A DNA stretch of 64,000 bases, from the IMG/VR virus record IMGVR_UViG_3300020202_000061, positions 248,001 through 312,000 of that record. One strand, written 5' to 3'. Below, in pieces: positions 8,064 to 63,163 of the stretch. The notes under the pieces are model-generated. The model was not told the origin of the DNA, did not search any database, and saw only the letters and a list, made by a program, of their open reading frames with translations. The translations under genes and the position numbers were made by a program. Within the stretch, counting starts at the first letter, position 1, and the number at the start of each line of letters is the position of its first letter.

Positions 8064-8072
8064 GGAGGAATT

Positions 8073-8270
8073 ATGACCACAGTAGCACATATTCAACTCA
8101 GTGACGGTACCGTCATGGAGCGTGTGTCCATCACGAGCCCAGCAGACGCGGATTTCGGCGACAACATTCAGAACGTGTTCAACGCGGGATGGATTCAGGT
8201 CCTCTTGGAGGCCAAGCCGGTATGGGTCCAGGTCCCGACCATTGCACTGATCGAGCCCGTTGCGGAGTAG
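8073..8270 (+). CDS. hypothetical protein
   Basis: Strong SD AGGAGG. Confidence 0.75.
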   Translation: MTTVAHIQLSDGTVMERVSITSPADADFGDNIQNVFNAGWIQVLLEAKPVWVQVPTIALIEPVAE

Positions 8271-13181: not shown

Positions 13182-13749
13182 GATCGTTTTCATCCGCCAT
13201 GGCGAATCCATGGGTAATGTGTGGGTGGGCGCTTACAAGAACGAAGCGGCAAATTTTCTGACCATCCGTGGGGTGAAACAGGTCGAGCTTGCTGCCATCG
13301 ATCTGATCCGCCGTAACATCCGATTCGATCACGTAGTTACGTCCGGCTTGACCCGCGCTCGCCAGACCGCAACCACCCTGATGCAGACCATGGACGATTG
13401 GCAACGTCATTACGTGGTCGAGCCGCGCCTGAATGAGTGGGTCAAAGTTGGATACGTTCATGATCCCAGCATTCTGGTTCAGGATCGCAAGGATTTCATC
13501 CAGCGCGTGACCGACGCCTACAAGGAGGTGATTGCCCCACTGGACGGGAATGTCCTAGTGGTCTCTCACTTCTTTGTGATGGAGGTGCTGTTCGAGCTTC
13601 TGGGATTCGGTGAGTACGGGAAAATCATTCACCAGCTTCCGAATGATTGGATTCCGAACGCTGTCCCCTACGTGTATGAACCGGGTAATTCCTGGCGTGT
13701 CCCTCGTCTGACCATGATCCACGCTTATGTGCCAGAGCCCCAGTACTAA
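13168..13749 (+). CDS. histidine phosphatase superfamily protein
   Basis: FIRHGES, LT..G..Q, S.L.RA.QT, LNE, VLVVSH. Confidence 0.92.
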   Translation: MSDNKIVFIRHGESMGNVWVGAYKNEAANFLTIRGVKQVELAAIDLIRRNIRFDHVVTSGLTRARQTATTLMQTMDDWQRHYVVEPRLNEWVKVGYVHDPSILVQDRKDFIQRVTDAYKEVIAPLDGNVLVVSHFFVMEVLFELLGFGEYGKIIHQLPNDWIPNAVPYVYEPGNSWRVPRLTMIHAYVPEPQY

Positions 13750-14141: not shown

Positions 14142-14319
14142 ACATTTTTCCCACACTCCGAAAGTTATTTTTACATCGTGATCTAAAAGGTTTCTATGTT
14201 TAACGGAAACCCCTTGATGTGATCATTAAAGACCTTATGTTACGCTATATACTAAGAGGCACCGAGGGTTTCAGATGCCTCTATGGGGATTCCAAATCAA
14301 CAACGGGGTCGAACAACGA

Positions 14320-16254: not shown

Positions 16255-16265
16255 GGGCTATCATA

Positions 16266-17555
16266 GTGACCACGGTCATTGACAGACGTAAGACCGACCG
16301 CCAGAAGAACCTCTCCAATAGGCAGAGGTTCATCAAAAGAGCCAAGGAAGCGATCAAGAAGTCGATCCGTGGAGCCATCCTCAATAAGGATCGCTCGATC
16401 AAAGACTCATCCGGCGGTAATGTTCGAATCCCCAACAAAGGGACGACAGAGCCGAATTTCCGCAATGGAGACGGTGGTCGTAAGATCATCGTTCGTCCGG
16501 GTAATCCAGGCACTGTGCCGGGTGACAAGATTCCACGTCCCAGAAAGGATCAGACTTCGGGCCGTGGTAACAGTGATCCATCCAAAGACCCCGCTGAGTT
16601 GATGGATGAGTTCGAGTTCACGCTGACCCGTGAGGAATTTCTGGACTTCTTCTTTGAGGACCTGGAATTGCCCAACTTGGTCAAGACCGCCCTCAAAGAG
16701 GTGGTCGAGTACAAATGGTCCCGTTCGGGATTTGCCTCGGTCGGTATGCCGTCGAATCTCGACATTACCCGAACCTTCATCAATTCGATGGGTCGCCATT
16801 TCGCTCTGGCCGGAGCCTACCAGAAAAAGATCGACGAACTTCGCGCTAATGGTGGATCGGAAGAGGATATCGCGCTCTGGGAGAAGAGGAAGCGGACCAT
16901 CCCGTTCATGGATGACGTGGACCTGCGCTATCGCCTGTTTGTGAAGCAGCCCAAGCCGATCACCAAAGCGGTAATGTTCTGTCTGATGGACGTATCTGGC
17001 AGTATGGGCGAGTACGAGAAGGACTTGGCCAAGCGTTTCTTCATGCTCCTCTACATGTTTCTGGAGCGCAAATACGAGTCGGTCACCGTGGTGTTCATCC
17101 GTCATACCACCGAAGCCAAAGAGGTGGACGAGCAGGAGTTCTTCTACTCGAAAGAATCAGGTGGAACCGTGGTCAGCACGGCTCTGGAAATGACTGCTGA
17201 TCTGATTCAGCGGCGCTTCAACAGTTCAGACTACAACATCTACGTGAGCCAGTGTTCGGACGGCGACAATGCCTACGATGACAACTCCGTGTGCACCCAG
17301 ATCATCCGTGAGGATATTCTGCCTTATGTCCAGTATTTTGCGTATGTCCAGGTCGGACATCAGCGCGATGAGATGGCCAACATGTGGGGTGTGTTTGCGG
17401 GTCGTCTTGGGAACACCACGAGCACGAATTCCCTCTACGAGGTTTATAAGGAGATCGAGAAGAATACCTCCCATTTCAAGGTGAAGAACCTGAATGGTCC
17501 TGCCGACATCTACCCGGTGTTTCGCGAACTCTTTGAGAAGGACATCAAGGTATGA
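16266..17555 (+). CDS. yeaH: YeaH/YhbH (DUF444) vWA-like protein
   Basis: IDRR, NRQRF, AVMFCLMDVSGSM, FIRHT, SGGT, SDGDN. Confidence 0.96.
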   Translation: MTTVIDRRKTDRQKNLSNRQRFIKRAKEAIKKSIRGAILNKDRSIKDSSGGNVRIPNKGTTEPNFRNGDGGRKIIVRPGNPGTVPGDKIPRPRKDQTSGRGNSDPSKDPAELMDEFEFTLTREEFLDFFFEDLELPNLVKTALKEVVEYKWSRSGFASVGMPSNLDITRTFINSMGRHFALAGAYQKKIDELRANGGSEEDIALWEKRKRTIPFMDDVDLRYRLFVKQPKPITKAVMFCLMDVSGSMGEYEKDLAKRFFMLLYMFLERKYESVTVVFIRHTTEAKEVDEQEFFYSKESGGTVVSTALEMTADLIQRRFNSSDYNIYVSQCSDGDNAYDDNSVCTQIIREDILPYVQYFAYVQVGHQRDEMANMWGVFAGRLGNTTSTNSLYEVYKEIEKNTSHFKVKNLNGPADIYPVFRELFEKDIKV

Positions 17556-19042
17556 GCCTGCTCTGGAATGATAATGAATGGACTTTCCCGCTCATCGACA
17601 AGGTCTACAAGGAGATCGAGCAGATCGGCGTGGGTGAGATGGGTCTGGACATCTTCCCGAATCAGATCGAGGTCATCAGCAGTGATCAGATGCTGGACGC
17701 TTATGCAAGCCATGCCATGCCAGTCATGTATAAGCACTGGTCCTTTGGCAAGTCGTATTCGGTCAACAAGAAACTCTATGAGAACGGTCAGCAGGGTCTG
17801 GCCTACGAGGTCGTAATCAACTCGAATCCCTGCATTGCCTATCTCATGGAGGACAACACCATGACCATGCAGGCTTTGGTCATGGCCCATGCCAGCATCG
17901 GTCACAACAACTTCTTCAAGACTAACTACCTGTTCCAGCAGTGGACCGATCCGGATGGGATCATCGACTACCTGATCTTCGCCAAGAATTATGTGGCGAA
18001 GTGTGAGGAGCGATACGGTGCCGAACGAGTCGAGGAAGTTCTCGATTCCTGTCACGCTCTCATGGACCAGGGTATGGACCGCTTTAAGCGAGCCCGCAAA
18101 CGTTCCCGTCAGGAGGAGAAGCTCCGTGCGGCCGAACGTGAAGCCTATCACCAAAGTCGTGTGAGTGAGCTTTGGCCGGACACCTGGAAGTCCGAGACCC
18201 CGGCCCAGAAGGAAGAACGCAAGAAGCGGATTCTTCCGGAGCCCGAGGACAACATCCTCTACTTCATCGAGAAGAACTCGCCGATCCTGGAGCCGTGGGA
18301 ACGAGAGATCGTTCGTATCGTCCGTAAGGTATCGCAGTATTTCTGGCCTCAGATGCAGACCCAGGTCGGTAATGAGGGCTGGGCCACCCATACCCATTAC
18401 TTCATTATGAATCGTCTCTACGAGAAGGGTCTGATCTCGGACGGTTCTCTGTTGGAGTTCTTCAAGTCCCACACGGGCGTTATCGCGCAGTATCGCATGC
18501 AGCGTCTGAACCCGTACTGCCTGGGATTCAACATTTTCCGCGACATCAAGCGTATGTGCGAGAAACCCACCGATGAGGATCGTGAATGGTTCCCCGATCT
18601 GGTCGGGATGAACTGGCTGGAAGCCGCGAAGGACGCGCGTGAGAACTACAAGGATGAGAGCCTGATCCTCCAGTACCTCAGCCCCAAGGTGATCCGCGAT
18701 CTTAAGCTTTTCTCGATCCTGGATGATTACGGCACGGACTCGATGAACTATATCGTCCAGAACATCCACGACCGGGAAGGCTACAAGGAAGTTCGTCGAT
18801 CCCTCTCTCGCAACTACGACATCAACATGAGAATTCCACAGATTCAGGTGTCGGATGTCAATGTGGATGGGGATCGCAAACTGATCCTTCGCCATACCCG
18901 TCACAACTATGTGCCGCTGGATCAGGCCGATCTCAAGGAAACTCTCCTCCATGTGAGGCGTCTCTGGGGGTTTGCGGTGCGTCTGGACTTCTACAATCCC
19001 GGCGCGGTCAGTCCCACGGATTGGGTAGCGGTGGGTGAATAA
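17552..19042 (+). CDS. spoVR: SpoVR/YcgB family protein
   Basis: HWSFGK, LAYEVVINSNPCIAYLME.N, AH...GHN.FFK.N, NEGWA, NPY.LG. Confidence 0.96.
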   Translation: MSLLWNDNEWTFPLIDKVYKEIEQIGVGEMGLDIFPNQIEVISSDQMLDAYASHAMPVMYKHWSFGKSYSVNKKLYENGQQGLAYEVVINSNPCIAYLMEDNTMTMQALVMAHASIGHNNFFKTNYLFQQWTDPDGIIDYLIFAKNYVAKCEERYGAERVEEVLDSCHALMDQGMDRFKRARKRSRQEEKLRAAEREAYHQSRVSELWPDTWKSETPAQKEERKKRILPEPEDNILYFIEKNSPILEPWEREIVRIVRKVSQYFWPQMQTQVGNEGWATHTHYFIMNRLYEKGLISDGSLLEFFKSHTGVIAQYRMQRLNPYCLGFNIFRDIKRMCEKPTDEDREWFPDLVGMNWLEAAKDARENYKDESLILQYLSPKVIRDLKLFSILDDYGTDSMNYIVQNIHDREGYKEVRRSLSRNYDINMRIPQIQVSDVNVDGDRKLILRHTRHNYVPLDQADLKETLLHVRRLWGFAVRLDFYNPGAVSPTDWVAVGE

Positions 19043-19082: not shown

Positions 19083-19334
19083 ATGATCTTCGATCTGGAA
19101 CACGCTCGAAAGGCTCGTAAGAAAGGCTCCGGAAGTCTGCTCAAGGAGTGGATTCCAACCTCGCCCCAAGTGGTGGAGGATTTCCGAGTCGGCGACAAGG
19201 TGAAGTTCCGCGACGGCAAGACCGGCACCATTCTGTGCTTCGGAGCGAGTTCCATGCGGGGACCATTACTGGCCCTGGTCGCTGTGAATGGTGTCAACTA
19301 CACCTGTCCGATCTCGGAACTCCGCTCGGCCTAA
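19083..19334 (+). CDS. small SH3/KOW-like protein
   Basis: FRVGDKVKF..GKTGTI; own promoter upstream. Confidence 0.65.
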   Translation: MIFDLEHARKARKKGSGSLLKEWIPTSPQVVEDFRVGDKVKFRDGKTGTILCFGASSMRGPLLALVAVNGVNYTCPISELRSA

Positions 19335-19337
19335 CCC

Positions 19338-19366
19338 TTGACAATTCCAAGATTGCGGAATAAATA
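19338..19366 (+). promoter_or_regulatory. tRNA promoter
   Basis: TTGACA-N17-TAAATA. Confidence 0.75.
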
Positions 19367-20620: not shown

Positions 20621-20661
20621 CTGGTCCCCCTTGGTTATTCCCAAGATATCCGAGAAACCTC

Positions 20662-20690
20662 TTGACTTCAAGCAGGGGATTCGCTAAATA
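20662..20690 (+). promoter_or_regulatory. tRNA promoter
   Basis: TTGACT-N17-TAAATA. Confidence 0.75.
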
Positions 20691-23042: not shown

Positions 23043-23192
23043 ATGGTAGAACGAGGCGACAAGATCACCCTGAAAGAGGCGATTGCGGAAGCGCAACGCG
23101 GAACTCTGAAACAGCGAGTCGCCCGACATCGCAAACGCCTGAAACGCAAGTATGGACTCGGACCCAAGCCGAAACGCTCCAAAACCCCTTGA
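23043..23192 (+). CDS. small basic protein (49 aa)
   Basis: MVERGDKIT...RHRKRLKRKYG...TP*. Confidence 0.55.
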   Translation: MVERGDKITLKEAIAEAQRGTLKQRVARHRKRLKRKYGLGPKPKRSKTP

Positions 23193-23217
23193 CATCCTCG
23201 GGGTTATCCTCTAAATA
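23189..23217 (+). promoter_or_regulatory. tRNA promoter
   Basis: TTGACA-N17-TAAATA. Confidence 0.75.
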
Positions 23218-23226: not shown

Positions 23227-23312
23227 GCCGGGATGGCTGAGTGGTCGAAAGCAGGCGTTTCGTAAGCGTCCGAAGCAATTCCTCGCAGGTTCGAATCCTG
23301 TTCCCGGCTCCA
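23227..23312 (+). tRNA. tRNA-Thr(CGT) with long variable arm
   Basis: Acceptor GCCGGGA/TCCCGGC, loop TTCGTAA, 14-nt variable region CGAAGCAATTCCTC, U73, CCA. Confidence 0.85.
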
Positions 23313-27806: not shown

Positions 27807-27910
27807 TCACCGCTAACGATAACCACCGATCTCTGGCGGAAATCCTCAATGATATCCACACCAGAAGGCGACGTGAATCTCTGACCCAACGCGTTCTGGG
27901 AAGATTCCTC

Positions 27911-27939
27911 TTGATTTTGAGCCGGATCACGCGTAAATA
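27911..27939 (+). promoter_or_regulatory. tRNA promoter
   Basis: TTGATT-N17-TAAATA. Confidence 0.65.
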
Positions 27940-27947: not shown

Positions 27948-28033
27948 GCCAGGATGGCTGAGTGGCCGAAAGCAGAGCCTTTGTAACGCTCCGGGGAAAC
28001 CCCACGCAGGTTCGAATCCTGTTCCTGGCTCCA
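27948..28033 (+). tRNA. tRNA-Thr(TGT) with long variable arm
   Basis: Acceptor GCCAGGA/TCCTGGC, loop TTTGTAA, variable arm GGGG-AAA-CCCC, U73, CCA. Confidence 0.87.
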
Positions 28034-32548: not shown

Positions 32549-32559
32549 TCGGAAACTTC

Positions 32560-32588
32560 TTGACACCCGAGGGGTATTCACCTAAATA
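32560..32588 (+). promoter_or_regulatory. tRNA promoter
   Basis: TTGACA-N17-TAAATA. Confidence 0.75.
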
Positions 32589-34073: not shown

Positions 34074-35849
34074 ATGGGTGGTTTGCTATTTCTGGCATTT
34101 GGGCTCGTTGCCCTTCTTTTGATCGGAGCATTCGCTCCGAATTTCATTCACAAAATCCTTACCAGCAAAGAATCGGAGCCGAGCAAGCTCCTGGTTCAGG
34201 CTCCGCGTGTCATCGCGTGGGGTGTGATGGTGGTGTGGGTTCTCAGTCTCTCGTTCGTGCACGTACCGATTGGTCAAGTCGGTATGTTGAACCTGATCTG
34301 GGGTGCCGAGCGTGAGCAGGGCGCGATCCTCGCTCGTAGTGGAAGTCAGCGTGGTCCGCAGACCGATCTTCTCGGACCCGGAACCAAATTCATCCCGTTC
34401 GTGCACGTGCTGTATGACGTGGAGACGGCCGATCAGTTCGTGGTGCCGGATGGCTTCTACGGCCTATTGACGGCCAAGGATGGCGCTCCGATGCCAGCGG
34501 GTCAGTATGTGGCTCCGGCCTGGAAGGAAGGCACAGAGAGCGAAATGCTCGACGCCGCCACGTTCCTCACCAAGGGCGGGATCAAGGGTCCGCAACTCTA
34601 CGTGCTGACGCCGGGTATCTACCCGCTGAACACCTACCTGTGGGACGCTCGCACCGAGGCTGCTTCCGATACCAATTCCGGAACAAGGGCCACAATCATC
34701 CCGGCTGGTTCCGTGGGTGTGGTGAAGTCGAACGTGACCGATCCCGGTATCGTCTGCAAGCAGGTCGAGGAAAAGGTGGACACAACCGTGGCCCACGATT
34801 CGAACGCGCTCTCCGCGCTACTCGTTCCGAAGGGTTGCACCGGTATCTGGAATGAAGTGCTGACGCCGGGTGCGTATTACCTGAACCGTCTCGCCTATCA
34901 GGTGACCATCGTCGATACGCGTGTTCAAACTCTCCAGTACGCTGGTGGTTACGACTCGCGCAAGATCGAACTGAATGTCGGCCTGGACGGCAAGATCGAG
35001 CAAGCCGAGTCCGCGTCCAAGATCAGCACGCCCGAAGGTGCAGCGGATTCCGCGATCAACGTGAAGGTTGGTTCCTGGGTGGTTCATCAGGACCTCAGGA
35101 TGGTGATCCAGGTCAGTCCGGAAAACGCCCCCATCGTGGTGGGTGCGGTCGGTGGACTCAAGCAGATCGAGGATTCCATCGTGACCCCGGCGGTGCAGTC
35201 GGTCGTGCGTGACGTGATGGGCGGCCTGCTGTTGTTCCCGAGCGAAACCGTCGCACGTCAGGTTGAGATCAACGATCTGATCGTGAACCGCGAATTCATC
35301 CAGAGCGTGATCGAGGATCGTATCCGCGCCGAGGGGGCCAAGGCGGGTTTGTCCGTGCGTGAGGTTCGTCTGGCCAATCCGGACATTCCGCCCGAAATGC
35401 TTCTCGGCAACAAGCGTGAGCAGCTTGCCCAGCAGATGAAGCAGGCGTTCGAGCAGGAAGAAGTTACGCAGACCCAGCGTATCAAGGTGGAGCAGGCCAA
35501 GGCCACTGCCGATCAGCAGGAATCCCTGGTGACCGCGCAGATCGGCGTGGAAGTCTCCAAGCTGACCATCAACAAGCGCACCAACGAGGGTCAGGCCGAA
35601 CAGGCTTACCTGGAAGCGCTCGCTGCGGGTCAGAAGGCCCAGGCTTTGGTCCTGGGCGAAGAGAACGTGCTGATCCTGAATATGGTCGATAAGGTCCTGG
35701 CTAGTCTCGGAAAGAACCCGGAAATCCTGGGCTCGATCAAGCTGCCCTCGACCATGGTCATGGGAGGCGGTTCGTTTGAGGGGGTGGCGGCAATCGTGAA
35801 GGACGCGCTCGGGGGAGCGCCTCGTTCCGAAGCGAAGCTGCCACAGTAA
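34074..35849 (+). CDS. SPFH/Band-7 (flotillin-like) domain protein
   Basis: 2 TM, GPQ...L.PG repeats, PAVQSVVRD, IP..., C-terminal coiled coil. Confidence 0.85.
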   Translation: MGGLLFLAFGLVALLLIGAFAPNFIHKILTSKESEPSKLLVQAPRVIAWGVMVVWVLSLSFVHVPIGQVGMLNLIWGAEREQGAILARSGSQRGPQTDLLGPGTKFIPFVHVLYDVETADQFVVPDGFYGLLTAKDGAPMPAGQYVAPAWKEGTESEMLDAATFLTKGGIKGPQLYVLTPGIYPLNTYLWDARTEAASDTNSGTRATIIPAGSVGVVKSNVTDPGIVCKQVEEKVDTTVAHDSNALSALLVPKGCTGIWNEVLTPGAYYLNRLAYQVTIVDTRVQTLQYAGGYDSRKIELNVGLDGKIEQAESASKISTPEGAADSAINVKVGSWVVHQDLRMVIQVSPENAPIVVGAVGGLKQIEDSIVTPAVQSVVRDVMGGLLLFPSETVARQVEINDLIVNREFIQSVIEDRIRAEGAKAGLSVREVRLANPDIPPEMLLGNKREQLAQQMKQAFEQEEVTQTQRIKVEQAKATADQQESLVTAQIGVEVSKLTINKRTNEGQAEQAYLEALAAGQKAQALVLGEENVLILNMVDKVLASLGKNPEILGSIKLPSTMVMGGGSFEGVAAIVKDALGGAPRSEAKLPQ

Positions 35850-36389: not shown

Positions 36390-36570
36390 CGCATTCGGTC
36401 CACTGTTCCTACTCGGGATGATATTCACCCTAGGCGGGGCCACCCTCGGGAAGGTCGTGCTCGGATTTTCGTGGTGGGGTGGATTTGGTATTCTGGTGGC
36501 ACTCTTGGTGTTCATCGGAATGATCATCGTATTCTTGTACACCACCGCGAATAAGTCCGAAACCGATTGA
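36382..36570 (+). CDS. small 2-TM membrane protein
   Basis: Hydrophobic. Confidence 0.7.
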   Translation: MDDAFGPLFLLGMIFTLGGATLGKVVLGFSWWGGFGILVALLVFIGMIIVFLYTTANKSETD

Positions 36571-37352
36571 TGTTCTACGTGATCCAGAGGAATCTTCTGA
36601 ATGAGGCGGACTTTGCCCGTCTGGTCGAGGCGGTAACCCGCTATGATCTGGATCATTGTTTTGTCGATATCATCCCGTTCACGAGCAGCCTCCAGGAGGA
36701 GATCGAACCGAAGCAGCCCTGCATGATCTTCGGTTCGACTACGTTGGCCAGGATCGCATCCGAGCGCGATTGGACTCCGGGATCATTCCTGAATGAGAAT
36801 CATGACGCACGTGTTTGGATTCCCGCTTATGGACCACATGCGTTGAACGCGGATGCGATCTTCTGCACATTCGGTGATGTCCCGGAACAATGGGACCCCT
36901 TCTTCATCCGTCCCTGCTTGGACTCGAAGAGCTTTACCGGAGAAGTATTGGACCGTAAGGAATTCGCGGAATGGCAGGACAAGGTTTTGCGTAGTGGAGC
37001 GACCATCGACGGGAATACCCCGGTAATGATCGCTGAGCCCACTCAGATCAATGCGGAGTACCGTTTCTTCATCGTAGATGGTCAGGTCATTACCGGGTCC
37101 ATCTACAAGCTCGACGGCCGAGCCATGACGCTACCCTGGAACCGCAACACCACTGTTCCGCTCGACACGGATGTCACAGAGTTTGCGAGGGAGCGAGCCG
37201 CCCAATGGAGTCCAGCCCGTGGATATGTGCTGGACATCGCACGTACGCCCATGGGGTTGAAGGTGATCGAGATCAACAACCTGAACAGTGCGGGATTCTA
37301 CAAGTCAGATATCAGTCTGATCCTGCAAGCCATCGAGGTCATGGAATGGTGA
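36567..37352 (+). CDS. ATP-grasp protein, R2K clade
   Basis: FGST, LN, FFIRP..D.KSFTG, EYRFFIV.G, VLDIA....KVIEIN..N.AGFY. Confidence 0.85.
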   Translation: MMFYVIQRNLLNEADFARLVEAVTRYDLDHCFVDIIPFTSSLQEEIEPKQPCMIFGSTTLARIASERDWTPGSFLNENHDARVWIPAYGPHALNADAIFCTFGDVPEQWDPFFIRPCLDSKSFTGEVLDRKEFAEWQDKVLRSGATIDGNTPVMIAEPTQINAEYRFFIVDGQVITGSIYKLDGRAMTLPWNRNTTVPLDTDVTEFARERAAQWSPARGYVLDIARTPMGLKVIEINNLNSAGFYKSDISLILQAIEVMEW

Positions 37353-37944: not shown

Positions 37945-38268
37945 ATGGACAACAGAATGACCTGGGAAGAGATAGGCGAAATCTTCGGGGGTAAGCTCAT
38001 CCCGATGGATGTGGCCAAACTCATCTACGAGGATAAGCACGATCTCACATCAGAGCAACTCCGCGATAAGCTCAAGGGGATCGCTGCGACTCGTGAACAC
38101 TTCCAGAGCTACACGGACTGGGACTATCTGACCTCATTGGCCGAGAGCATCGGCAAGAACCGGGCGGGGGAGTTCAACAAGTACGACACGGGTCGTCTCC
38201 TGGAGATCGCGCGTCGAATCAATCCTCAGCACTTTGTCGTGCCCAAGAAAGAAGGGATGCGCTGCTAG
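37945..38268 (+). CDS. hypothetical protein
   Basis: SD GGAG. Confidence 0.7.
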   Translation: MDNRMTWEEIGEIFGGKLIPMDVAKLIYEDKHDLTSEQLRDKLKGIAATREHFQSYTDWDYLTSLAESIGKNRAGEFNKYDTGRLLEIARRINPQHFVVPKKEGMRC

Positions 38269-38663
38269 ACCACCCAGGTCTGGCTGGGGGTGTGGAAGTC
38301 GCGCTTGCGGATGACCGTCTTGGCGATGATCTTCAAACGGCGGTCACGGCGATCCACATCCAGGACGAATGGCACATTCAGGTCGTTCCGGGTGTCCTTG
38401 AACACGCCCTGAGCGCCCGGCTCCAATAGAGCGATCTGACGCCCGTGCTGGGCGATCTCCTGCTGGAATAGATGGATGATCTCCTGAACGCCTATAGGAG
38501 CCTTGTTGCGGGCGTCCCCAAGGCGTTCCTTCCAATGCCGGGACATAACCAGCCCCAAGCCCACAGCCTGCCACAGGCGATCCAGATAGCGCTCCAACTG
38601 AGTCAGCCCGGACGCACCGAGGTTGCTCATTGGATTATCTTCGAGGAGAGCCAGCAATCGCAT
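38265..38663 (-). CDS. late protein, possible internal head protein
   Basis: TAAATA 4 nt upstream of the ATG; N-terminus MRLLALLE; H..ERL.D.RN, KT..RK motifs. Confidence 0.75.
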   Translation of the reverse strand: MRLLALLEDNPMSNLGASGLTQLERYLDRLWQAVGLGLVMSRHWKERLGDARNKAPIGVQEIIHLFQQEIAQHGRQIALLEPGAQGVFKDTRNDLNVPFVLDVDRRDRRLKIIAKTVIRKRDFHTPSQTWVV

Positions 38664-38673
38664 GGAAATATTT

Positions 38674-38827
38674 AGGCCCCCTGAAGAGGAGGGCTTCAGG
38701 GGGCCTTATGGCCGTCAGCGGAAAGCTTCAGGCAGGTTCTGGGTTCTTCCTGACCGACCACCATCAACCCAGAAGGTTGGCCCGGACATCGCACACGGCC
38801 AGGAGGGCAAACTCACAGCGCGGCGAT
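38674..38827 (-). ncRNA. candidate rod-shaped sRNA with CCUCCU motifs
   Basis: Own promoter. Stems TGGCCGT/ACGGCCA and TTCTGGGTT/AACCCAGAA. Ends in a 13-bp hairpin with loop CCCTCCT. Confidence 0.55.
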
Positions 38828-38833
38828 AGGATA

Positions 38834-38862
38834 CTTATAGCAAATTCCGAGATGGTCGTCAA
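38834..38862 (-). promoter_or_regulatory. sigma70-like promoter on the minus strand
   Basis: TTGACG-N17-TATAAG. Confidence 0.7.
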
Positions 38863-38897
38863 GACAATAATATCCTTAAATATCGGGGAGGTGAATT

Positions 38898-39644
38898 ATG
38901 GAGAAAACCCGCTACCGTACCGTGTTTGTTCGGGATACACACCTCGGAACCCGTGGGTGCAAAGCGGTGGAATTGGGAAATTTTCTCAGTCGGGTTCAGT
39001 GCGACACCCTCTATCTGATCGGCGACATAATCGATTTCTGGAAGTTTCGTTCCGGGTGGTATTGGCCGAAGGCTCATTCCGAGGTGATTCGTTGTCTCCT
39101 GCGTATGCGGATGGACGGAACCCGCCTGATTTACATACCGGGTAATCATGACGATCTCCTCCGTCATCTCGACGGAGTTGAGTTCGGCGGATTACGAATT
39201 GATGAATCCGTCATTCATGAGTGTCTGGACGGTCGTCGTCTCTGGATCACCCACGGAGATCAGTTCGATCCGGTGGTCCGGAACTATCCCTGGCTTGGCA
39301 TCCTCGGTACGCAACTTCTCGATTTGCTGATCCAGTTCAGTCAATGGCTGCGCAAGAACAAGCTGATTCCAAAGCTAGGCAAGTTCTCCCTGGCCAATTA
39401 CGTCGCCGACAAGGGCAAGACCAATACCCGAGTGATCGACAATTTCGAACGGGCCATTACCGCCGCGACCAAACGCAAACGCCTGGATGGTGTGGTGTGT
39501 GGTCATACCCATCAACCGAAAATTCTTGAAATTAACGAGGTTGTTTACTACAATGATGGTGATTGGGTGGAGTCGAATACTGCGCTGGTCGAGCACGTCG
39601 ATGGGCGTTTCGAATTAACATGCCCGAATGGAAGGAACGCCTGA
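38898..39644 (+). CDS. plcP: PlcP-type metallophosphoesterase (phospholipase C / LpxH-like)
   Basis: RYRT...D.HLGTRGCKA, LYLIGDIID.W, WYWP..H, YIPGNHD, HGD.FD, DGVVCGH.H, NDGDWVES.TALVEH. Confidence 0.8.
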   Translation: MEKTRYRTVFVRDTHLGTRGCKAVELGNFLSRVQCDTLYLIGDIIDFWKFRSGWYWPKAHSEVIRCLLRMRMDGTRLIYIPGNHDDLLRHLDGVEFGGLRIDESVIHECLDGRRLWITHGDQFDPVVRNYPWLGILGTQLLDLLIQFSQWLRKNKLIPKLGKFSLANYVADKGKTNTRVIDNFERAITAATKRKRLDGVVCGHTHQPKILEINEVVYYNDGDWVESNTALVEHVDGRFELTCPNGRNA

Positions 39645-39645
39645 C

Positions 39646-39759
39646 ATGGTATCGCTAATTTGTGTGATATTGTTTGCGTGGTGGCTGTGTGATCTCGGCC
39701 TTCGAATTCTGGAGCATCGTCGCCAGAACAAATTCTGGGAAACTCGTAGATCATGGTGA
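39646..39759 (+). CDS. 37-aa single-TM microprotein between plcP and agt
   Basis: MVSLICVILFAWWLCDLGLRILEHRRQNKFWETRRSW*; fills the gap and overlaps the next start. Confidence 0.5.
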   Translation: MVSLICVILFAWWLCDLGLRILEHRRQNKFWETRRSW

Positions 39760-40745
39760 AGATCGCCATCGTCACCGACGCGTGGGCTCCGCAGATCAAC
39801 GGGGTTGTCCGCACGCTCCAGGCCACGGTTGAGCACCTGCGAGCGCGAGATCATCAAGTCATGGTGATTGAGCCCTCCACATTCCACCAGATCGGTATGC
39901 CCACCTACAACGAGATCGCGATCTCATTGTTTCCGGCCGAACAAGTGCATCGTCGCCTGGACCAGTTCGAACCTGATCGGATTCACATCGCCACCGAAGG
40001 CACGCTGGGTTGGGCTGCACGCGAATATTGTGGACTTGCGGGAATCTCCTTCACGACGAGTTTCCACACGAACTTTCCCGACTACGCGTGGCATCGTATC
40101 CGATTCCCCCGAGCAATTTCCTGGGCGATCCTCCGTGCGTTCCATTCGATGGCCCGCAAGGTCCTGGTGAACACTCCGGCTATGGTGGAGGAACTCCATC
40201 GTAACGGGATCACCAACACCGCGATGTGGTCACGTGGATCGGATTTCATCGGTTACCGCAATCTTCCAGCGGACTTCGAGGTTCTCGCCCTGCCAGCACC
40301 CAGGTTTGTTTATGTGGGACGCGTGAGCGTGGAAAAGAACATCGAAGCATTCCTCGACGCGAAACTCCCCGGCACCAAGGTGGTGGTCGGGGATGGACCG
40401 GCCCGAGAGAAGCTCCAACAGAAATACCCCACGGTGCATTTCCTTGGCTACCGCACTGGTCTTGATCTGGCTGGGGCCATCAAGGCGTGCGAGGTCATGG
40501 TGTTTCCGAGCCGCACCGACACGTTCGGTTTGGTCATGATCGAGGCCATGAGCCTGGGGGTGCCCGTGGCGGCTTATCCCGTGATCGGACCCAAGGATGT
40601 GGTCGATCATGGAGTGACCGGGTTCCTCAATGAGGACCTCCGTCTGGCCGCCCTAAACTGTCTCTGGATGAAGCGTCCGATCCAGTATCCAGAACGTTTC
40701 ACCTGGGAAACCGCTACGGATCAGTTCGAGGCGGCTTTGGCGTAA
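39753..40745 (+). CDS. agt: GT4 glycosyltransferase, Agt-type diacylglycerol glycosyltransferase
   Basis: IAIVTDAW.PQ.NGVVRTL, PTY.EI, HIATEG.LG, FTTSFHT.FP.Y, WSRG, YVGRV..EKNI, VFPS.TDTFG.V..EA. Confidence 0.8.
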   Translation: MVKIAIVTDAWAPQINGVVRTLQATVEHLRARDHQVMVIEPSTFHQIGMPTYNEIAISLFPAEQVHRRLDQFEPDRIHIATEGTLGWAAREYCGLAGISFTTSFHTNFPDYAWHRIRFPRAISWAILRAFHSMARKVLVNTPAMVEELHRNGITNTAMWSRGSDFIGYRNLPADFEVLALPAPRFVYVGRVSVEKNIEAFLDAKLPGTKVVVGDGPAREKLQQKYPTVHFLGYRTGLDLAGAIKACEVMVFPSRTDTFGLVMIEAMSLGVPVAAYPVIGPKDVVDHGVTGFLNEDLRLAALNCLWMKRPIQYPERFTWETATDQFEAALA

Positions 40746-40814
40746 ATATTGGAAACCACTCGGTATTCCTGTAAAATGCTTGACATTTTCGACATTTTCG
40801 AGTATAATCCTCCG

Positions 40815-41246
40815 ATGCCGTTGAAGCTGATCCCGGACACCGATCCCGTATTGCATGAGAAGGCCGAACCCGTTCAGAACGTGAACGAGGAAGTCGAGCC
40901 CGTGCTGATGGAAATGATCGCGATCATGGTCCGCGCCGGGGGCGTCGGTTTGGCCGCGCCCCAGGTCGGAATCAAGAAGCGTTTCTTCATCATCGCCTAC
41001 GGCGGTCTGACCAACGTCTACATCAATCCGGAGATCGTCAAGTCGGAGCCCAAAACCGTCAATATGGTGGAGGGTTGCCTGAGTTATCCCGGTCAGAATC
41101 GTGAAATTGTTCGTCACGAGCGCATCCGCGTGGCCTACACCACGATCACTGGAGAGCACAAGTCTCACTACGTGAATGGGATGATGGCCCGCATCTTCCA
41201 GCACGAACTCGATCACCTTGATGGAATTGTTTTCTTGGAACGATAA
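40815..41246 (+). CDS. def: peptide deformylase
   Basis: GVGLAAPQVG, EGCLS, QHELDHLDG. Confidence 0.97.
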   Translation: MPLKLIPDTDPVLHEKAEPVQNVNEEVEPVLMEMIAIMVRAGGVGLAAPQVGIKKRFFIIAYGGLTNVYINPEIVKSEPKTVNMVEGCLSYPGQNREIVRHERIRVAYTTITGEHKSHYVNGMMARIFQHELDHLDGIVFLER

Positions 41247-42886: not shown

Positions 42887-43224
42887 TGCTGGTAAACCTG
42901 ATCGATGCGCGGTCGAATCGCTACGATGTCCATTGTGATGCGGAGCTTCGACCATCCTGGTTGGACAACGGATTGCCCGGCGCAACGCAATTCCCGGTGA
43001 TCCGACCGAACACGGACATGGCCAAGCCCATGTTGTCTCTGCACATGCCCAACACCTGCTTGATCGAGATCATCAACCTCTGCCAGACCCTGGGATTTCC
43101 GGTCACCGCATATCTCTATGATCGGGGAACTCAGACCCGAATCCAGACCGAATACAAGCAGGTCGAAACCCTTCTGGAGCAGACAACCACAGAGAAAATC
43201 AACGCTCCAGAAAAAACCTCTTGA
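42886..43224 (+). CDS. hypothetical protein
   Basis: TGATG coupling. Confidence 0.7.
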   Translation: MLVNLIDARSNRYDVHCDAELRPSWLDNGLPGATQFPVIRPNTDMAKPMLSLHMPNTCLIEIINLCQTLGFPVTAYLYDRGTQTRIQTEYKQVETLLEQTTTEKINAPEKTS

Positions 43225-43249
43225 CTTCCCGAACGGTTTCCCCTAAATA
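43221..43249 (+). promoter_or_regulatory. promoter of the Arg/Lys tRNA cluster
   Basis: TTGACT-N17-TAAATA. Confidence 0.75.
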
Positions 43250-60482: not shown

Positions 60483-60547
60483 GGTTGAAAATCCTCAATC
60501 GTATACTCATTTATTTAGGGGAACCCGAGGATTTCATAAATATTAAC

Positions 60548-61354
60548 ATGAGAGTCATCGTCTGCGGTGGTAGGGATTTTGAGGACGTAGAATTCGTCAT
60601 CCACTACCTAAACCACGTCCACAACTGGAATCCGATCACCTGTGTGATTGCCGGAGCCGCTCGGGGTGTGGACACGTTTGCGGAGCTTTGGGCGGACGAG
60701 ATGGGTATTCCCAAGGAGGTATATCCGGCTGACTGGGACAAACACGGGAAGTCTGCGGGACCCATCCGTAATCAGGAAATGCTCGACAAGTCCAATCCGG
60801 ATATGATCATGGCCTTCCCTGGTGGTCGTGGAACCGCCCACATGTTCAAGATTGCCGAGGCCCATGGAGGTGTCGATCTATGGCAGTCCAAGCAGATTCT
60901 CTTCCGTAAGCGCGATCCCAAATACGGGTTCATGTCGAATTTTGCCGAGGGGTTTGAATTCGTCGATCAGGATGGTCTGATTTGGTCCACCAGCGAGCAC
61001 CACTATCAGGCTCAAAAAGCCACAAACGAGGAGGATCGCAGCCGGGTCCAGATGGCCCGTACCGCATTCGATTCGAAGCAGATTGGTGGTTCTATTACCC
61101 TGCGTCCGGACTGGGACGAGGTCAAGATAGACTGCATGCGTCAAACCCTGGCTCTGAAGTTCGCTGAAGGTTCGAAGGCGGCCGATCGCCTCATGGACAC
61201 CCAGGCGGCCTATCTCGTAGAGGATACGCCCTGGGGCGATCAATTCTGGGGGAAAACCTATGGTGTCGGAGAGAGTCATCTGGGAAAACTCTTGATGGAA
61301 CGTCGTGAATCCCTTATTCTGGGGACTCCTGTGAGGATTTGGTATCCCGAGTGA
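60548..61354 (+). CDS. SLOG (DUF2493/YspA-like)-NADAR fusion protein
   Basis: VCGGR.F, G.A.G.D..A, ADW..HGK.AGPIRN, AFPGG.GT; then SNF, SEH.YQA.K, R.DW...K...M..KF, LVE...D..WG, LG..LM..R. Confidence 0.9.
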   Translation: MRVIVCGGRDFEDVEFVIHYLNHVHNWNPITCVIAGAARGVDTFAELWADEMGIPKEVYPADWDKHGKSAGPIRNQEMLDKSNPDMIMAFPGGRGTAHMFKIAEAHGGVDLWQSKQILFRKRDPKYGFMSNFAEGFEFVDQDGLIWSTSEHHYQAQKATNEEDRSRVQMARTAFDSKQIGGSITLRPDWDEVKIDCMRQTLALKFAEGSKAADRLMDTQAAYLVEDTPWGDQFWGKTYGVGESHLGKLLMERRESLILGTPVRIWYPE

Positions 61355-62215: not shown

Positions 62216-62628
62216 CGGCGAAGTGATTTCCGCGTCAGATAATTGATCACCGAATCGGTCAGCGCTTCCATGCGATCCTGGAGGCGCTGGATCGACCGCT
62301 TCACCTCGATGATCTGGCTCTCGACGTTCTTGATCTGCACCCGCACGGTGCCATCCAGGGTCTCCTGAAGCACTGCAAGCTTCTGTTCGAGGTCGGCGAG
62401 TTCCCTCTGGACCTCCTCAATCTCTTGCTCAGTCTTGGGATCAGCATGCTGAACGGGGTCCTTTTCCTTCTCCCCATCCACACGATTCTCGATCCACATA
62501 CGAGCGACCTGAACCACACCAAGAACCACGGTGGTGACCGCACCCAAAACGGATGCGACTAGGCCAAAAGCTCCGGCCCAGGATAAAGGTTTGAAAACCT
62601 CTACAATATCAACCAACAAGTCCATCAT
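62212..62628 (-). CDS. membrane-anchored coiled-coil protein
   Basis: N-terminal TM, heptad-rich C-terminus. Confidence 0.75.
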   Translation of the reverse strand: MMDLLVDIVEVFKPLSWAGAFGLVASVLGAVTTVVLGVVQVARMWIENRVDGEKEKDPVQHADPKTEQEIEEVQRELADLEQKLAVLQETLDGTVRVQIKNVESQIIEVKRSIQRLQDRMEALTDSVINYLTRKSLRR

Positions 62629-63163
62629 GACGGAATTCTGCCTTTAGGCGATACAGGTCTTTAAGAACCGTGTACTCGGCTGTTACATCTCGAATGATCC
62701 CCACGGTGCCCAGGTACTCCCCGTTTCTGATCGGGTAATAATTGATATGCAGGGTATGACCCCGATCCAGGGTCACCTCAAATTCTCCTTCTTCTCCTTT
62801 CGTGGCCAGGGTCCAGTGATCCTTCACGAACTCTCGCCACCGACGCCCAAAGATGAGTTCACCCTGCTCGGGCAACTTCATCTGAGTTGATTCCTTCGGG
62901 GTAAATCCTAGAAGCGTGCAGGCAGAGGGGTTGACAAACTCGATACGGCCATTGGGGTCCGTCTTGAACAGACCGATATTGATCCGCTCGGCTATGATTC
63001 GCAGAGATTCTTGTGCCTCGAACAAAGGCTTTTCATATGCTTCCATCGCCAAAGGTCCAAAATCGTTATGACCAGCATATTTATGCCATGCACGATCCGT
63101 GAGGCGTTCCACCGGGAACAACACGACGTTTTTGACGAGCGCAACATTTTCCCTGGTGTACAT
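62609..63163 (-). CDS. stand-alone PAS-domain protein
   Basis: LRIIAE....G....D..GRI.FVN..AC.LLG.T..E; G.VG..RDVT; TAAATA upstream. Confidence 0.85.
   Translation of the reverse strand: MYTRENVALVKNVVLFPVERLTDRAWHKYAGHNDFGPLAMEAYEKPLFEAQESLRIIAERINIGLFKTDPNGRIEFVNPSACTLLGFTPKESTQMKLPEQGELIFGRRWREFVKDHWTLATKGEEGEFEVTLDRGHTLHINYYPIRNGEYLGTVGIIRDVTAEYTVLKDLYRLKAEFRHDGLVG

What the first reader, a model, noticed from the sequence alone, without database searches (positions are those of the whole stretch)
38876..40745. Phage-encoded PlcP-Agt membrane-lipid remodelling cassette
Seen: a metallophosphoesterase and a GT4 glycosyltransferase in tandem behind a TAAATA motif, bridged by a 37-aa TM microprotein. 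Established: in alphaproteobacteria the phospholipase PlcP (often annotated LpxH-like) releases diacylglycerol, and Agt converts it to glycosyl/glucuronosyl-DAG under phosphate starvation. The motifs here match those subfamilies. Inference: the phage frees phosphate from host phospholipids for genome synthesis, or alters the membrane. I saw no clear PHO box, so expression may be uncoupled from host PhoB.
Basis: partly seen in the sequence, partly recalled or inferred. Interest (0 to 1): 0.8.

Follow-up and report, generated by a model that had tools for sequence, protein, structure and literature searches.

The report
Phage-borne PlcP–Agt lipid-remodelling gene pair
A giant soil phage carries the two bacterial genes that swap phosphorus-containing membrane lipids for sugar lipids during phosphate starvation, but under phage rather than host starvation control, so phages may mine the host membrane for phosphorus.

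Summary
At 38898-39644 there is a 248-aa metallophosphoesterase, and at 39753-40745 a 330-aa GT4 glycosyltransferase. Both lie behind a TAAATA element in a jumbo phage (contigs of 347-401 kb) from soil.

The phosphoesterase is PlcP-type, not LpxH:
- It is 45% identical, without gaps, to the P. aeruginosa PlcP (PA3219) orthologue, against 25% to E. coli LpxH.
- It keeps the GNHD histidine that every LpxH replaces by arginine.
- It fails both LpxH equivalog models.

The glycosyltransferase is Agt-type:
- It is 43% identical to the P. aeruginosa Agt1 orthologue.
- It has the GRVxxEKN and FPSxTDTFG motifs and the His-Asp dyad of the Agt/GTcp clade.
- Its nearest reviewed folds are diacylglycerol-glycolipid synthases.

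Of the 80 closest cellular homologues, 57 have the same adjacent pair, and many of those have Pho-box-like sites. The phage copies have none. Four related phage contigs keep the pair under strong purifying selection (dN/dS 0.05-0.14).

The "bridging" micro-ORF is an orphan insertion that is absent from relatives, so it is not part of the cassette.

Enzyme activity, sugar donor, host and the phosphate-scavenging purpose remain inferred. I found no paper that describes phage-encoded PlcP-Agt. Homologues in isolated phages are annotated as LpxH.

The parts
38664..38897 (.). Conserved non-coding region between the divergent minus-strand gene (38265-38663) and the cassette. It starts with a 13-bp-stem hairpin.
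   Evidence: Mean identity is 88% among four phage relatives, although synonymous sites of the flanking genes are near saturation (dS 0.7-1.3). Frame-breaking indels rule out coding. There is no Rfam hit and no covariation. The minus strand folds with z = -3.55 and the plus strand with z = -1.42. The best Pho-box match is 9 of 14, which is the mode of shuffles.
38877..38882 (+). TAAATA element, a candidate phage-programmed -10-like promoter element with no convincing -35.
   Evidence: It lies 15 nt before the ATG. The hexamer is enriched 18 versus 6.5 in the window. The same hexamer serves as the -10 of CTTGAC-N17-TAAATA promoters before tRNA genes, and it stands alone 5-25 nt before other ATGs. 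It is invariant in four relatives.
38885..38891 (+). Shine-Dalgarno sequence GGGGAGG of the phosphoesterase gene.
   Evidence: Read from the sequence; invariant in the relatives.
38898..39644 (+). PlcP-type (LpxH2-type) metallophosphoesterase, a predicted phospholipase C, 248 aa.
   Evidence: Pfam Metallophos. All metal ligands and His84 are invariant in the family alignment. 45% identity over 238 aa with no gaps to the P. aeruginosa PlcP orthologue, against 25% to E. coli LpxH. Fails the LpxH equivalog models. The AlphaFold2 model (pLDDT 78.9) shows a catalytic core plus a helical insertion, and LpxH is the nearest fold. dN/dS 0.05-0.09.
39628..39759 (+). Orphan micro-ORF (43 aa, or 37 aa from ATG 39646). 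It has one hydrophobic helix and a basic tail, and is inserted at the gene junction. It is not a conserved part of the cassette.
   Evidence: Absent in L009 and L010; a different ORF sits there in L003. No homologue found.
39753..40745 (+). Agt-type GT4 (GT-B, retaining) glycosyltransferase, a predicted UDP-sugar:diacylglycerol glycosyltransferase, 330 aa.
   Evidence: Pfam GT4 domains. 43% identity over 329 aa to the P. aeruginosa Agt1 orthologue. 44-56% identity to cellular GT4s that lie downstream of plcP. H105, GRVSVEKN (R190, K195), FPSRTDTFG (D256-G259) and E264 match the Agt/GTcp signature of PMC8231724. AlphaFold2 pLDDT 90.3, with the best Swiss-Prot folds being DAG-glycolipid GT4s. 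dN/dS 0.08-0.14.

Best explanation
This is a phage-carried copy of the bacterial PlcP-Agt membrane-lipid remodelling operon.

Step 1, supported by homology: the PlcP-type metallophosphoesterase docks on the cytoplasmic face of the inner membrane through its helical insertion domain. It cuts the glycerol-phosphate bond of host phospholipids, giving diacylglycerol (DAG) plus a phosphorylated head group.

Step 2, supported by homology: the Agt-type GT4 transfers glucose and/or glucuronic acid from a UDP-sugar to that DAG. The resulting phosphorus-free glycolipid keeps the bilayer intact and removes DAG.

Step 3, inferred: the released head-group phosphate is dephosphorylated by host enzymes, or possibly by a phage phosphatase, and feeds nucleotide synthesis for a 347-401 kb genome.

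Regulation, partly shown: the host-type Pho box is missing and a conserved phage TAAATA element takes its place. Remodelling would therefore be switched on by the infection programme rather than by PhoB.

My confidence in the enzyme identities is about 0.8. My confidence in phosphate scavenging as the selected benefit is about 0.45.
For: Identity of the two enzymes:
-.
- GNHD rather than the Arg found in all LpxH (alignment; PMC5016852).
- Agt/GTcp motifs and the His-Asp dyad (invariants against PMC8231724).
- Identity to the P. aeruginosa enzymes (45% and 43%) equals that between validated family members: 46-47% for PlcP and 35-41% for Agt (PMC8528852).
- Structure: LpxH-like two-domain fold. 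For the GT4, the top reviewed folds are MgtA/Rv0557, S. pneumoniae and A. laidlawii monoglucosyl-DAG synthases, and SQD2.

The pair as a module:
- 57 of the 80 nearest cellular loci have the MPE directly upstream.
- Among them is Erythrobacter sp. SD-21, which Sebastian et al. list as PlcP with neighbour Agt.
- 24 of 60 cellular upstream regions match the Pho-box consensus at 11 or more of 14 positions, against 0 of 14 viral regions. The window scores 9 of 14, the shuffle mode.

Phage context and selection:
- PolB phrog_262, 18 tRNAs, and an IMG/VR contig of 347.5 kb (401 kb in another assembly).
- The same synteny in four contigs and dN/dS 0.05-0.14.
- Both gene trees place the phage clade in the same alphaproteobacterial neighbourhood, which suggests the pair was acquired jointly.

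Link to phosphorus stress in other phages:
- The homologue in Pelagibacter phage Mosig sits next to pstS.
- A T4-like IMG/VR contig with the pair also carries PhoH.
Against: - No biochemical or expression data exist. No RNA run was listed.
- PlcP releases phospho-head groups, not free phosphate, so a phosphatase step is assumed.
- The sugar donor cannot be read from sequence. P. aeruginosa Agt1 makes only MGDG, Agt2 makes only GADG, and SAR11 and Agrobacterium Agt make both.
- The host is unknown, and so is the phosphate status of its soil habitat.
- The cap domain of the PlcP model has low confidence (pLDDT 36-56 over residues 130-172).
- The promoter role of TAAATA is inferred from enrichment and conservation only.
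- The placement of the phage clade in the trees rests on a long stem (1.2-1.9 substitutions per site) and moderate support (86-92).
Confidence: 0.6

Rival explanations
1. The enzymes are the same, but the selected benefit is a changed cell surface or membrane rather than phosphorus supply. Replacing phospholipids by glycolipids could block superinfection by competing phages, alter envelope stability or lysis timing, or protect the infected cell from predators or antimicrobials.
For: Lipid remodelling is reported to change phage attachment and predator-prey outcomes (titles and abstracts of PMC9804370, PMC9938194 and PMC9457565) and antibiotic tolerance (PMC8528852). The cassette lacks a Pho box, so it is not tied to phosphorus status. 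Nearby phage genes include a Band_7/SPFH membrane-scaffold protein.
Against: PlcP-like genes in other phages sit beside classical phosphorus-stress genes: pstS in Mosig and PhoH in L016. Inner-membrane glycolipids are not obviously exposed to incoming phages. Nothing in the window ties the pair to an exclusion system.
Confidence: 0.22
2. The lipids serve a phage-built membrane structure. The DAG and glycolipid would supply or remodel lipid for intracellular vesicles or compartments made by some jumbo phages.
For: The genome is of jumbo size. A Band_7 protein and a hydrophobic micro-ORF lie nearby.
Against: I looked for no compartment or shell genes and saw none in the window. The same pair occurs in ordinary T4-like contigs of much smaller phages. 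The micro-ORF is not conserved.
Confidence: 0.06
3. An LpxH plus an LPS or DNA glycosyltransferase. The phosphoesterase would work in lipid A synthesis and the GT4 would decorate LPS, capsule or phage DNA, as the database annotations imply.
For: Public annotations call the homologues UDP-2,3-diacylglucosamine diphosphatase or 'glycosyltransferase involved in cell wall biosynthesis'. LpxH is the nearest solved fold.
Against: The protein has His84 where every LpxH has Arg. It scores 47.9 and 39.7 bits against cut-offs of 134 and 190, and is 25% identical to E. coli LpxH against 45% to PlcP. The best GT4 matches are DAG-glycolipid synthases, with LPS enzymes far lower. The closest MPE homologues come from Caulobacter, Phenylobacterium and sphingomonads; from my own knowledge, this class makes lipid A with LpxI, not LpxH.
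Confidence: 0.04
4. An assembly artefact or host contamination. The pair would be bacterial DNA wrongly joined to a phage contig.
For: Some IMG/VR contigs carrying the pair have host-like neighbours, for example L017 with a CHASE2 cyclase and FecR.
Against: Four independent assemblies (7.4, 46, 347/401 and 409 kb) share the same phage synteny on both sides: R2K ATP-grasp ... MPE-GT4-pdf .... GC content is even across the window. The phage clade is 44-56% diverged from any cellular copy and sits on a long stem.
Confidence: 0.02

Closest known systems
P. aeruginosa PlcP-Agt1 operon (PA3219-PA3218; Jones et al. 2021, PMC8528852)
   Same: Same two genes in the same order and strand, overlapping or abutting. 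The phage proteins are 45% and 43% identical over their full lengths. Same metal ligands, same GNHD, same UDP-sugar motifs.
   Different: The bacterial operon has a Pho box and is PhoB-induced, whereas the phage copy has none and sits behind a phage TAAATA element. The phage proteins are shorter: 248 versus 270 aa and 330 versus 351 aa. In this phage only, an orphan micro-ORF is wedged between the genes.
SAR11 HTCC7211 PlcP (PB7211_983) and Agt/GTcp (PB7211_960); A. tumefaciens Agt (atu2297)
   Same: Same 'type 2' plcP-agt arrangement (PMC4796936). The GT4 is almost the same length (330 versus 334 aa). It has the GRVAXEKN and FPSXTDTFG motifs, Asp in place of the EX7E glutamate, and R190, K195, D256-G259 and E264 at the same residue numbers.
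   Different: Donor range (Glc, Gal, GlcA) is known for them and unknown here.
LpxH (UDP-2,3-diacylglucosamine diphosphatase)
   Same: Same superfamily and two-domain architecture: a metallophosphoesterase core plus a helical lipid-binding insertion. LpxH is the nearest solved fold (TM about 0.57).
   Different: 25% identity. The LpxH-specific Arg80 is His here. The protein falls far below both equivalog cut-offs. E. coli LpxH is separated by a branch of about 10 substitutions per site in the tree.
Phage phosphorus-stress auxiliary metabolic genes (pstS, phoH, phoA of cyanophages and pelagiphages)
   Same: These are host-derived genes carried by lytic phages that plausibly relieve phosphorus limitation during infection. 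PlcP-like genes lie beside pstS in Pelagibacter phage Mosig and near phoH in IMG/VR contig L016.
   Different: Those genes import or signal phosphate. This pair would instead mobilise phosphorus already locked in the host's own membrane. From my own knowledge, cyanophage pstS/phoA keep a host Pho box; this cassette has none.

Membership tests
PlcP (LpxH2-type phospholipase C of lipid remodelling) | Calcineurin-like metallophosphoesterase with the full set of metal-binding motifs (DxH, GD, GNH[DE], H, GHxH) | tested here: met
   D13, H15, D43, N83, H84, H119, H203 and H205 are invariant in alignments A1 and A3. Pfam Metallophos.
PlcP (LpxH2-type phospholipase C of lipid remodelling) | Full-length similarity to an experimentally validated PlcP at the level seen between validated members (46-47%) | tested here: met
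   45% identity over 238 aa, 0 gaps, 218 bits to the P. aeruginosa PA3219 orthologue (L102). Calibration from PMC8528852. In the tree, the P. aeruginosa PlcP lies in the same clade and E. coli LpxH lies outside it.
PlcP (LpxH2-type phospholipase C of lipid remodelling) | Helical insertion (lipid-binding cap) domain inside the catalytic core | tested here: met
   The AlphaFold2 model has helices at 120-193 between core strands. LpxH is the best fold match. The cap has low confidence (pLDDT 36-56).
PlcP (LpxH2-type phospholipase C of lipid remodelling) | Linked to a gene for a phosphorus-free lipid (agt, btaBA, pgt) | tested here: met
   An Agt-type GT4 lies directly downstream. The same holds in 57 of 80 cellular loci and in all viral loci that carry the GT4.
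PlcP (LpxH2-type phospholipase C of lipid remodelling) | Pho box and PhoB-dependent induction | tested here: not met
   The best match to CTGTCATN4CTGTCAT in the 300 nt upstream is 9 of 14, the shuffle mode. 24 of 60 cellular operons reach 11 or more. This is a regulatory feature, not an enzymatic one.
PlcP (LpxH2-type phospholipase C of lipid remodelling) | Hydrolyses PE, PG or PC to diacylglycerol plus a phospho-head group | not testable with these tools
   Needs an enzyme assay or lipidomics.
LpxH | Arg replaces the His of the GNH(D/E) motif in all LpxH (Arg80; PMC5016852) | tested here: not met
   The window protein reads PGNHDD where E. coli LpxH reads HGNRDF (alignments).
LpxH | Scores above the NCBIfam equivalog cut-offs (NF003743: 134 bits; TIGR01854: 190 bits) | tested here: not met
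   47.9 and 39.7 bits. Cellular plcP-position homologues score equally low, at 39-60 bits.
Agt / GTcp clade of GT4 (DAG glucosyl/glucuronosyl-transferase) | [quoted passage not shown] | tested here: met
   GRVSVEKN at 189-196 and FPSRTDTFG at 251-259. G17, G83 and G86 are invariant. Pfam GT4. The AlphaFold2 model has two Rossmann domains and pLDDT 90.3. Motifs as defined in PMC8231724.
Agt / GTcp clade of GT4 (DAG glucosyl/glucuronosyl-transferase) | Catalytic His-Asp dyad, with Asp (not Glu) at the first position of the EX7E motif | tested here: met
   H105 and D256...E264 are invariant across 21 homologues. GTcp has His104-Asp256, and D256E loses more than 90% of activity.
Agt / GTcp clade of GT4 (DAG glucosyl/glucuronosyl-transferase) | Full-length similarity to a validated Agt (validated members share 35-41%; other GT4s share under 25%) | tested here: met
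   43% over 329 aa to the P. aeruginosa Agt1 orthologue. 51% to the Erythrobacter sp. SD-21 gene listed as Agt by Sebastian et al.. Other GT4 families reach at most 63.5 bits in NCBIfam.
Agt / GTcp clade of GT4 (DAG glucosyl/glucuronosyl-transferase) | Makes MGlc-DAG and/or GlcA-DAG from UDP-sugar and DAG | not testable with these tools
   Nearest reviewed folds are DAG-glycolipid enzymes, but product and donor need an assay.
Phage auxiliary metabolic gene | Encoded inside a bona fide phage genome, conserved among related phages, and under purifying selection | tested here: met
   T4-type PolB (phrog_262, 568 bits), 18 tRNAs, and an IMG/VR UViG of 347.5 kb. Same synteny in four contigs. dN/dS 0.05-0.14. 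I did not look for virion genes inside this window.

The most novel reading that the evidence does not exclude
Membrane-lipid remodelling is an unrecognised class of phage auxiliary metabolism. Unrelated phage lineages would have repeatedly captured plcP, with or without agt: soil jumbo phages, T4-like marine contigs, Pelagibacter phage Mosig and freshwater cyanophage S-SRM01. They would run it independently of PhoB to strip phosphorus from the host membrane for genome synthesis. If so, part of the glycolipid signal used as a marker of phosphorus stress in nature would be virus-driven.
Probability: 0.35. Interest if true: 0.75.

Novelty: new member of a known kind. Interest (0 to 1): 0.6.

Why it matters
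PlcP-Agt remodelling is a major route by which bacteria cut their phosphorus quota, and glycolipids such as GlcA-DAG are read as markers of phosphorus stress.

A phage that carries the whole pathway under its own promoter would add the host membrane to the phosphorus pools a virus can mobilise. From my own knowledge, the host chromosome, imported phosphate and RNA are already on that list, and a Gram-negative cell holds about 2 x 10^7 phospholipids. A 0.35-0.4 Mb genome costs about 0.7-0.8 million phosphorus atoms per copy, so full conversion of the membrane would cover roughly 25 genome copies.

The finding also shows that 'LpxH' annotations in phage genomes (Mosig, S-SRM01, viromes) are probably PlcP. 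That changes how these genes are counted in surveys of auxiliary metabolic genes.

The idea is directly testable by expressing the genes in E. coli with lipidomics, and in the culturable Mosig/HTCC1062 system.

Tried and rejected
- Nucleotide search of the cassette against 50,697 phage records found nothing.
- PHROGs has no family for either protein beyond weak generic hits.
- NCBIfam has no PlcP or Agt model, so only the negative LpxH result is informative.
- Swiss-Prot holds no PlcP or Agt entry. The fold search could therefore give only LpxH and generic DAG-glycolipid GT4s.
- I could not obtain the validated SAR11, Phaeobacter, S. meliloti or A. tumefaciens sequences. I used P. aeruginosa instead: a PLSDB 'plasmid' record that actually carries the PA3223-PA3217 chromosomal neighbourhood.
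I rebuilt the alignment without them and did not send those rows to any other external (shared-database) search; they went only into the NCBIfam family scan and the sandbox trees and scans.
- Rfam search and consensus folding of the conserved upstream region gave no family and no covariation.
- No RNA-seq run holding the cassette was listed, so I could not check transcription or the transcription start site.
- The micro-ORF has no homologue, and I rejected it as a cassette component.
- My peptide-deformylase query was one base out of frame (the pdf ATG is 40815). Those rows should be ignored. The presence of pdf in relatives rests on the Pfam marks.
- I considered host contamination and rejected it (see rival explanations).
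Full report
WHAT IS THERE. The window is part of a very large phage genome.
- Its own glycosyltransferase sits on a 401,308-bp contig, and an identical stretch lies on IMG/VR UViG_3300020202_000061 (347,504 bp).
- The window holds a T4-type family-B DNA polymerase (phrog_262, 568 bits), 18 tRNA genes all on the + strand, and many small orphan genes.
- The runs that hold the stretch are soil metagenomes.

At the reported place there are three ORFs on the + strand:
- a 248-aa metallophosphoesterase (MPE) at 38898-39644;
- a 43-aa ORF at 39628-39759, or 37 aa from ATG 39646;
- a 330-aa GT4 glycosyltransferase at 39753-40745.

Pfam confirms both enzyme families. TAAATA sits at 38877-38882, 15 nt before the ATG, and is followed by GGGGAGG. 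Downstream, peptide deformylase (ATG 40815) has its own perfect TTGACA-N17-TATAAT promoter. The cassette is therefore a separate two-enzyme unit.

CONSERVATION IN RELATED PHAGES. Three further contigs carry the same neighbourhood: R2K ATP-grasp, small genes, a divergent 132-aa gene, MPE, GT4, pdf. They are 409 kb (L009), 46 kb (L010) and 7.4 kb (L003).
- Protein identities to the window are 88-93% for the MPE and 81-87% for the GT4.
- Pairwise dN/dS is 0.05-0.09 for the MPE and 0.08-0.14 for the GT4. dS is 0.7-1.3, so synonymous sites are close to saturation and both proteins are under strong purifying selection in the phage lineage.
- In L009 and L010 the MPE stop abuts or overlaps the GT4 start. 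L003 has an unrelated hydrophilic 54-aa ORF at that junction. The window has its hydrophobic micro-ORF there.
- The micro-ORF has no homologue among 5.8 billion proteins. It is a strain-specific insertion at an indel-prone junction and is translationally coupled to the GT4, because its TGA overlaps the GT4 ATG. It is not a conserved 'bridge'.

PlcP OR LpxH? Public annotation calls all close homologues LpxH. Four tests say otherwise.
1. Both NCBIfam LpxH equivalog models are missed by a wide margin: 47.9 bits against 134 and 39.7 against 190. The cellular homologues that lie next to a GT4 miss them in the same way.
2. Okada et al. report that in every LpxH the catalytic His of the GNH(D/E) motif is Arg80, which clamps the lipid X phosphate (PMC5016852). 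The window protein reads GNHD where E. coli LpxH reads GNRD.
3. A PLSDB record of P. aeruginosa HOU1 carries the neighbourhood azoR3 - tRNA-binding protein - HTH regulator - 'UDP-2,3-diacylglucosamine diphosphatase' - GT family 1 - cyaB.
   - The adjacent diphosphatase-glycosyltransferase pair is the PA3219-PA3218 arrangement of Jones et al.. That cyaB is PA3217, so that this is the PA3219/PA3218 locus, is from my own knowledge.
   - The phage MPE is 45% identical to this PlcP over 238 residues with no gap, cap region included (218 bits).
   - It is only 25% identical, with many gaps, to E. coli LpxH (49 bits).
   - Validated PlcPs are themselves 46-47% identical to each other (PMC8528852).
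4. In a maximum-likelihood tree, the P. aeruginosa PlcP and all phage and cellular GT4-linked MPEs form one side. E. coli LpxH is separated by a branch of about 10 substitutions per site.

All seven metal ligands and His84 are invariant. The AlphaFold2 model (pLDDT 78.9) has the LpxH-like architecture of a core plus a helical insertion, and LpxH is the nearest fold at about 20% identity.

Agt OR ANOTHER GT4? Wei et al. define the Agt/GTcp clade by four features (PMC8231724):
- two UDP-sugar motifs, GRVAXEKN and FPSXTDTFG;
- a Gly-rich motif;
- a His104-Asp256 dyad in which Asp replaces the usual EX7E glutamate;
- less than 25% identity to other GT4s.

The phage protein has G17, G83, G86, H105, GRVSVEKN (R190, K195), FPSRTDTFG (D256, T257, F258, G259), E264 and W318. 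All are invariant across 21 homologues. Further evidence:
- It is 43% identical over 329 residues to the P. aeruginosa Agt1 orthologue. Agt1 is 41% identical to the MED193 Agt.
- It is 51% identical to the Erythrobacter sp. SD-21 gene (L029). Sebastian et al. list that organism as PlcP with neighbour Agt.
- One close homologue (51% identity) is named 1,2-diacylglycerol 3-alpha-glucosyltransferase/glucuronosyltransferase by JGI.
- The AlphaFold2 model (pLDDT 90.3) is closest, among reviewed proteins, to MgtA/Rv0557 (TM 0.90-0.91), the S. pneumoniae and A. laidlawii monoglucosyl-DAG synthases (0.88, 0.83) and plant SQD2 (0.81). From my own knowledge these all act on DAG-based glycolipids: MgtA/Rv0557 mannosylates glucuronosyl-DAG, and SQD2 also makes glucuronosyl-DAG.
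- LPS and polysaccharide GT4s rank lower.

THE PAIR IS A MODULE.
- A scan of one genome per species returned 599 relatives of the GT4. The best 80 have 44-55% identity and come from Alpha-, Beta- and Gammaproteobacteria and a few other phyla.
- In 57 of these 80 the MPE lies directly upstream on the same strand. Several of the rest have too little upstream sequence to judge.
- Upstream of the cellular pairs, 24 of 60 regions match the Pho-box consensus CTGTCATN4CTGTCAT at 11 or more of 14 positions. None of 14 viral regions does. The window scores 9 of 14, which is what shuffled sequence gives.
- So the cellular relatives look like Pho-regulon plcP-agt operons, and the phage copies have lost that control.

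ORIGIN. Both gene trees put the four-contig phage clade (100% support, stem 1.2-1.9 substitutions per site) in the same moderately supported group of Sphingomonadales, Acetobacteraceae and Rhodospirillales (support 86-92). A Phycisphaerae MAG is the nearest MPE. This suggests, but does not prove, one old capture of the whole operon from an alphaproteobacterium.

OTHER PHAGES. Other viral sequences form separate groups.
- IMG/VR contigs L015-L020 all carry MPE plus GT4.
- Of these, L016 also has T4 RNase H and PhoH. L019 has a split ribonucleotide reductase with an HNH endonuclease. L020 has amidoligase and 2OG-Fe(II) oxygenase genes typical of myophage accessory regions. L017 has host-like neighbours and may be contamination.
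- Pelagibacter phage Mosig has the MPE alone (38.8% identity), next to pstS. Cyanophage S-SRM01 has a more distant copy.
- Phage carriage of PlcP is therefore recurrent, and the two isolated phages (Mosig, S-SRM01) annotate their copy as LpxH.

REGULATION.
- TAAATA is enriched in the window (18 versus 6.5).
- Seven copies are the -10 of clean CTTGAC-N17-TAAATA promoters, six of them directly in front of tRNA genes.
- Most of the others stand alone 5-25 nt before start codons on either strand, as at the cassette.
- The 210 nt upstream of the cassette are 88% identical among the four phages despite saturated synonymous sites. TAAATA and the ribosome-binding site are invariant.
- I read TAAATA as a phage-programmed promoter element. 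This is inference, because no transcript data could be found.

MECHANISM AND PURPOSE. What is shown:
- two intact, selected enzymes of the PlcP and Agt families;
- they are arranged as an operon, in a phage, without a Pho box.

What is inferred:
- PlcP cleaves host PE/PG/PC to DAG and a phospho-head group.
- Agt converts the DAG to glucosyl- and/or glucuronosyl-DAG.
- The head-group phosphate is recycled into nucleotides.

The sugar donor cannot be called, because validated Agts differ in specificity. The phosphatase step is assumed; a histidine-phosphatase-family gene at 13168-13749 is a candidate only. The main rival is that the altered membrane itself is the benefit. I give the enzyme identities about 0.8 and the phosphate-scavenging purpose about 0.45.

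NOVELTY. Full-text searches found no paper that joins 'auxiliary metabolic' with plcP. They found none that describes phage-encoded PlcP or Agt. One virome paper lists 'lpxH' among viral transcripts under LPS biosynthesis. The enzymes and the pathway are well known, and phage phosphorus-stress genes are well known. A phage-carried, PhoB-uncoupled lipid-remodelling operon appears to be undescribed. I rate it a new member of a known kind, of moderate to good interest (0.6), and readily testable.

Noticed in passing
window 3155-3190, 19331-19366, 20655-20690, 23182-23217, 27904-27939, 32553-32588, 43214-43249: Seven near-identical sigma-70-like promoters (aaaCCyCTTGAC-N17-TAAATA). Six lie 5-23 nt upstream of tRNA genes or tRNA clusters; the seventh (43214-43249) lies about 240 nt upstream of the tRNA-Arg cluster at 43492. 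This is a clean promoter family for the phage tRNA genes.
   Followed up: partly
window 38664-38897: A divergent intergenic region that is 88% identical among four phages, although synonymous sites are saturated. It has frame-breaking indels, a 13-bp-stem hairpin at its 5' end, no Rfam family and no covariation. The minus strand folds with z = -3.55. It may be a leader or regulatory RNA for the minus-strand 132-aa gene or for the cassette.
   Followed up: partly
window 14275-19042: A complete PrkA (YeaG) - DUF444 (YeaH) - SpoVR (YcgB) operon, with very strong Pfam scores (566, 477 and 536 bits), encoded by the phage. From my own knowledge this is a bacterial starvation and stress kinase module.
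   Followed up: no
window 40780-41246: Peptide deformylase (ATG 40815) behind a perfect TTGACA-N17-TATAAT promoter, immediately after the GT4 stop. It is conserved in all relatives.
   Followed up: partly
window 13168-13749: A histidine-phosphatase-superfamily protein (His_Phos_1, 54.9 bits). It is a possible partner for releasing phosphate from phospho-head groups, but this is pure speculation.
   Followed up: no
window 34074-35849 and 36567-37352: A 591-aa Band_7/SPFH membrane-scaffold protein and an R2K-clade ATP-grasp protein lie just upstream of the cassette. Both are conserved in L009 and L010.
   Followed up: no
window 23227-23312 and 27948-28033: Two tRNAs called tRNA-Thr (anticodons CGT and TGT) are 86 nt long. 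That is the length of class II tRNAs with a long variable arm, which is unusual for threonine.
   Followed up: no
window 60485-61354 and 62609-63163 (-): A fusion of a SLOG (YspA-like) domain and a NADAR domain, and a separate PAS-domain protein. Divergent TAAATA elements lie at 60512/60537.
   Followed up: no
L001 (Pelagibacter phage Mosig, MT647606) 3909-5744: The 'putative UDP-2,3-diacylglucosamine hydrolase' of Mosig (38.8% identical to the window MPE) is divergently adjacent to pstS. It groups with PlcP-type proteins, not with LpxH, and no Agt is next to it.
   Followed up: partly
L016 (IMGVR_UViG_3300009184_005285) 537-8096; L019; L020: Smaller T4-like viral contigs carry the same MPE-GT4 pair. 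In L016 it lies within 4 kb of PhoH and T4 RNase H. These groups are separate from the window's clade in both trees.
   Followed up: partly
L102 (NZ_CP042268.1, 'plasmid pHOU1-1'): A P. aeruginosa record filed as a 167-kb plasmid carries what I take, from the cyaB marker and my own knowledge of PAO1 gene numbering, to be the chromosomal PA3223-PA3217 neighbourhood. It may be a mis-assigned chromosomal segment.
   Followed up: no
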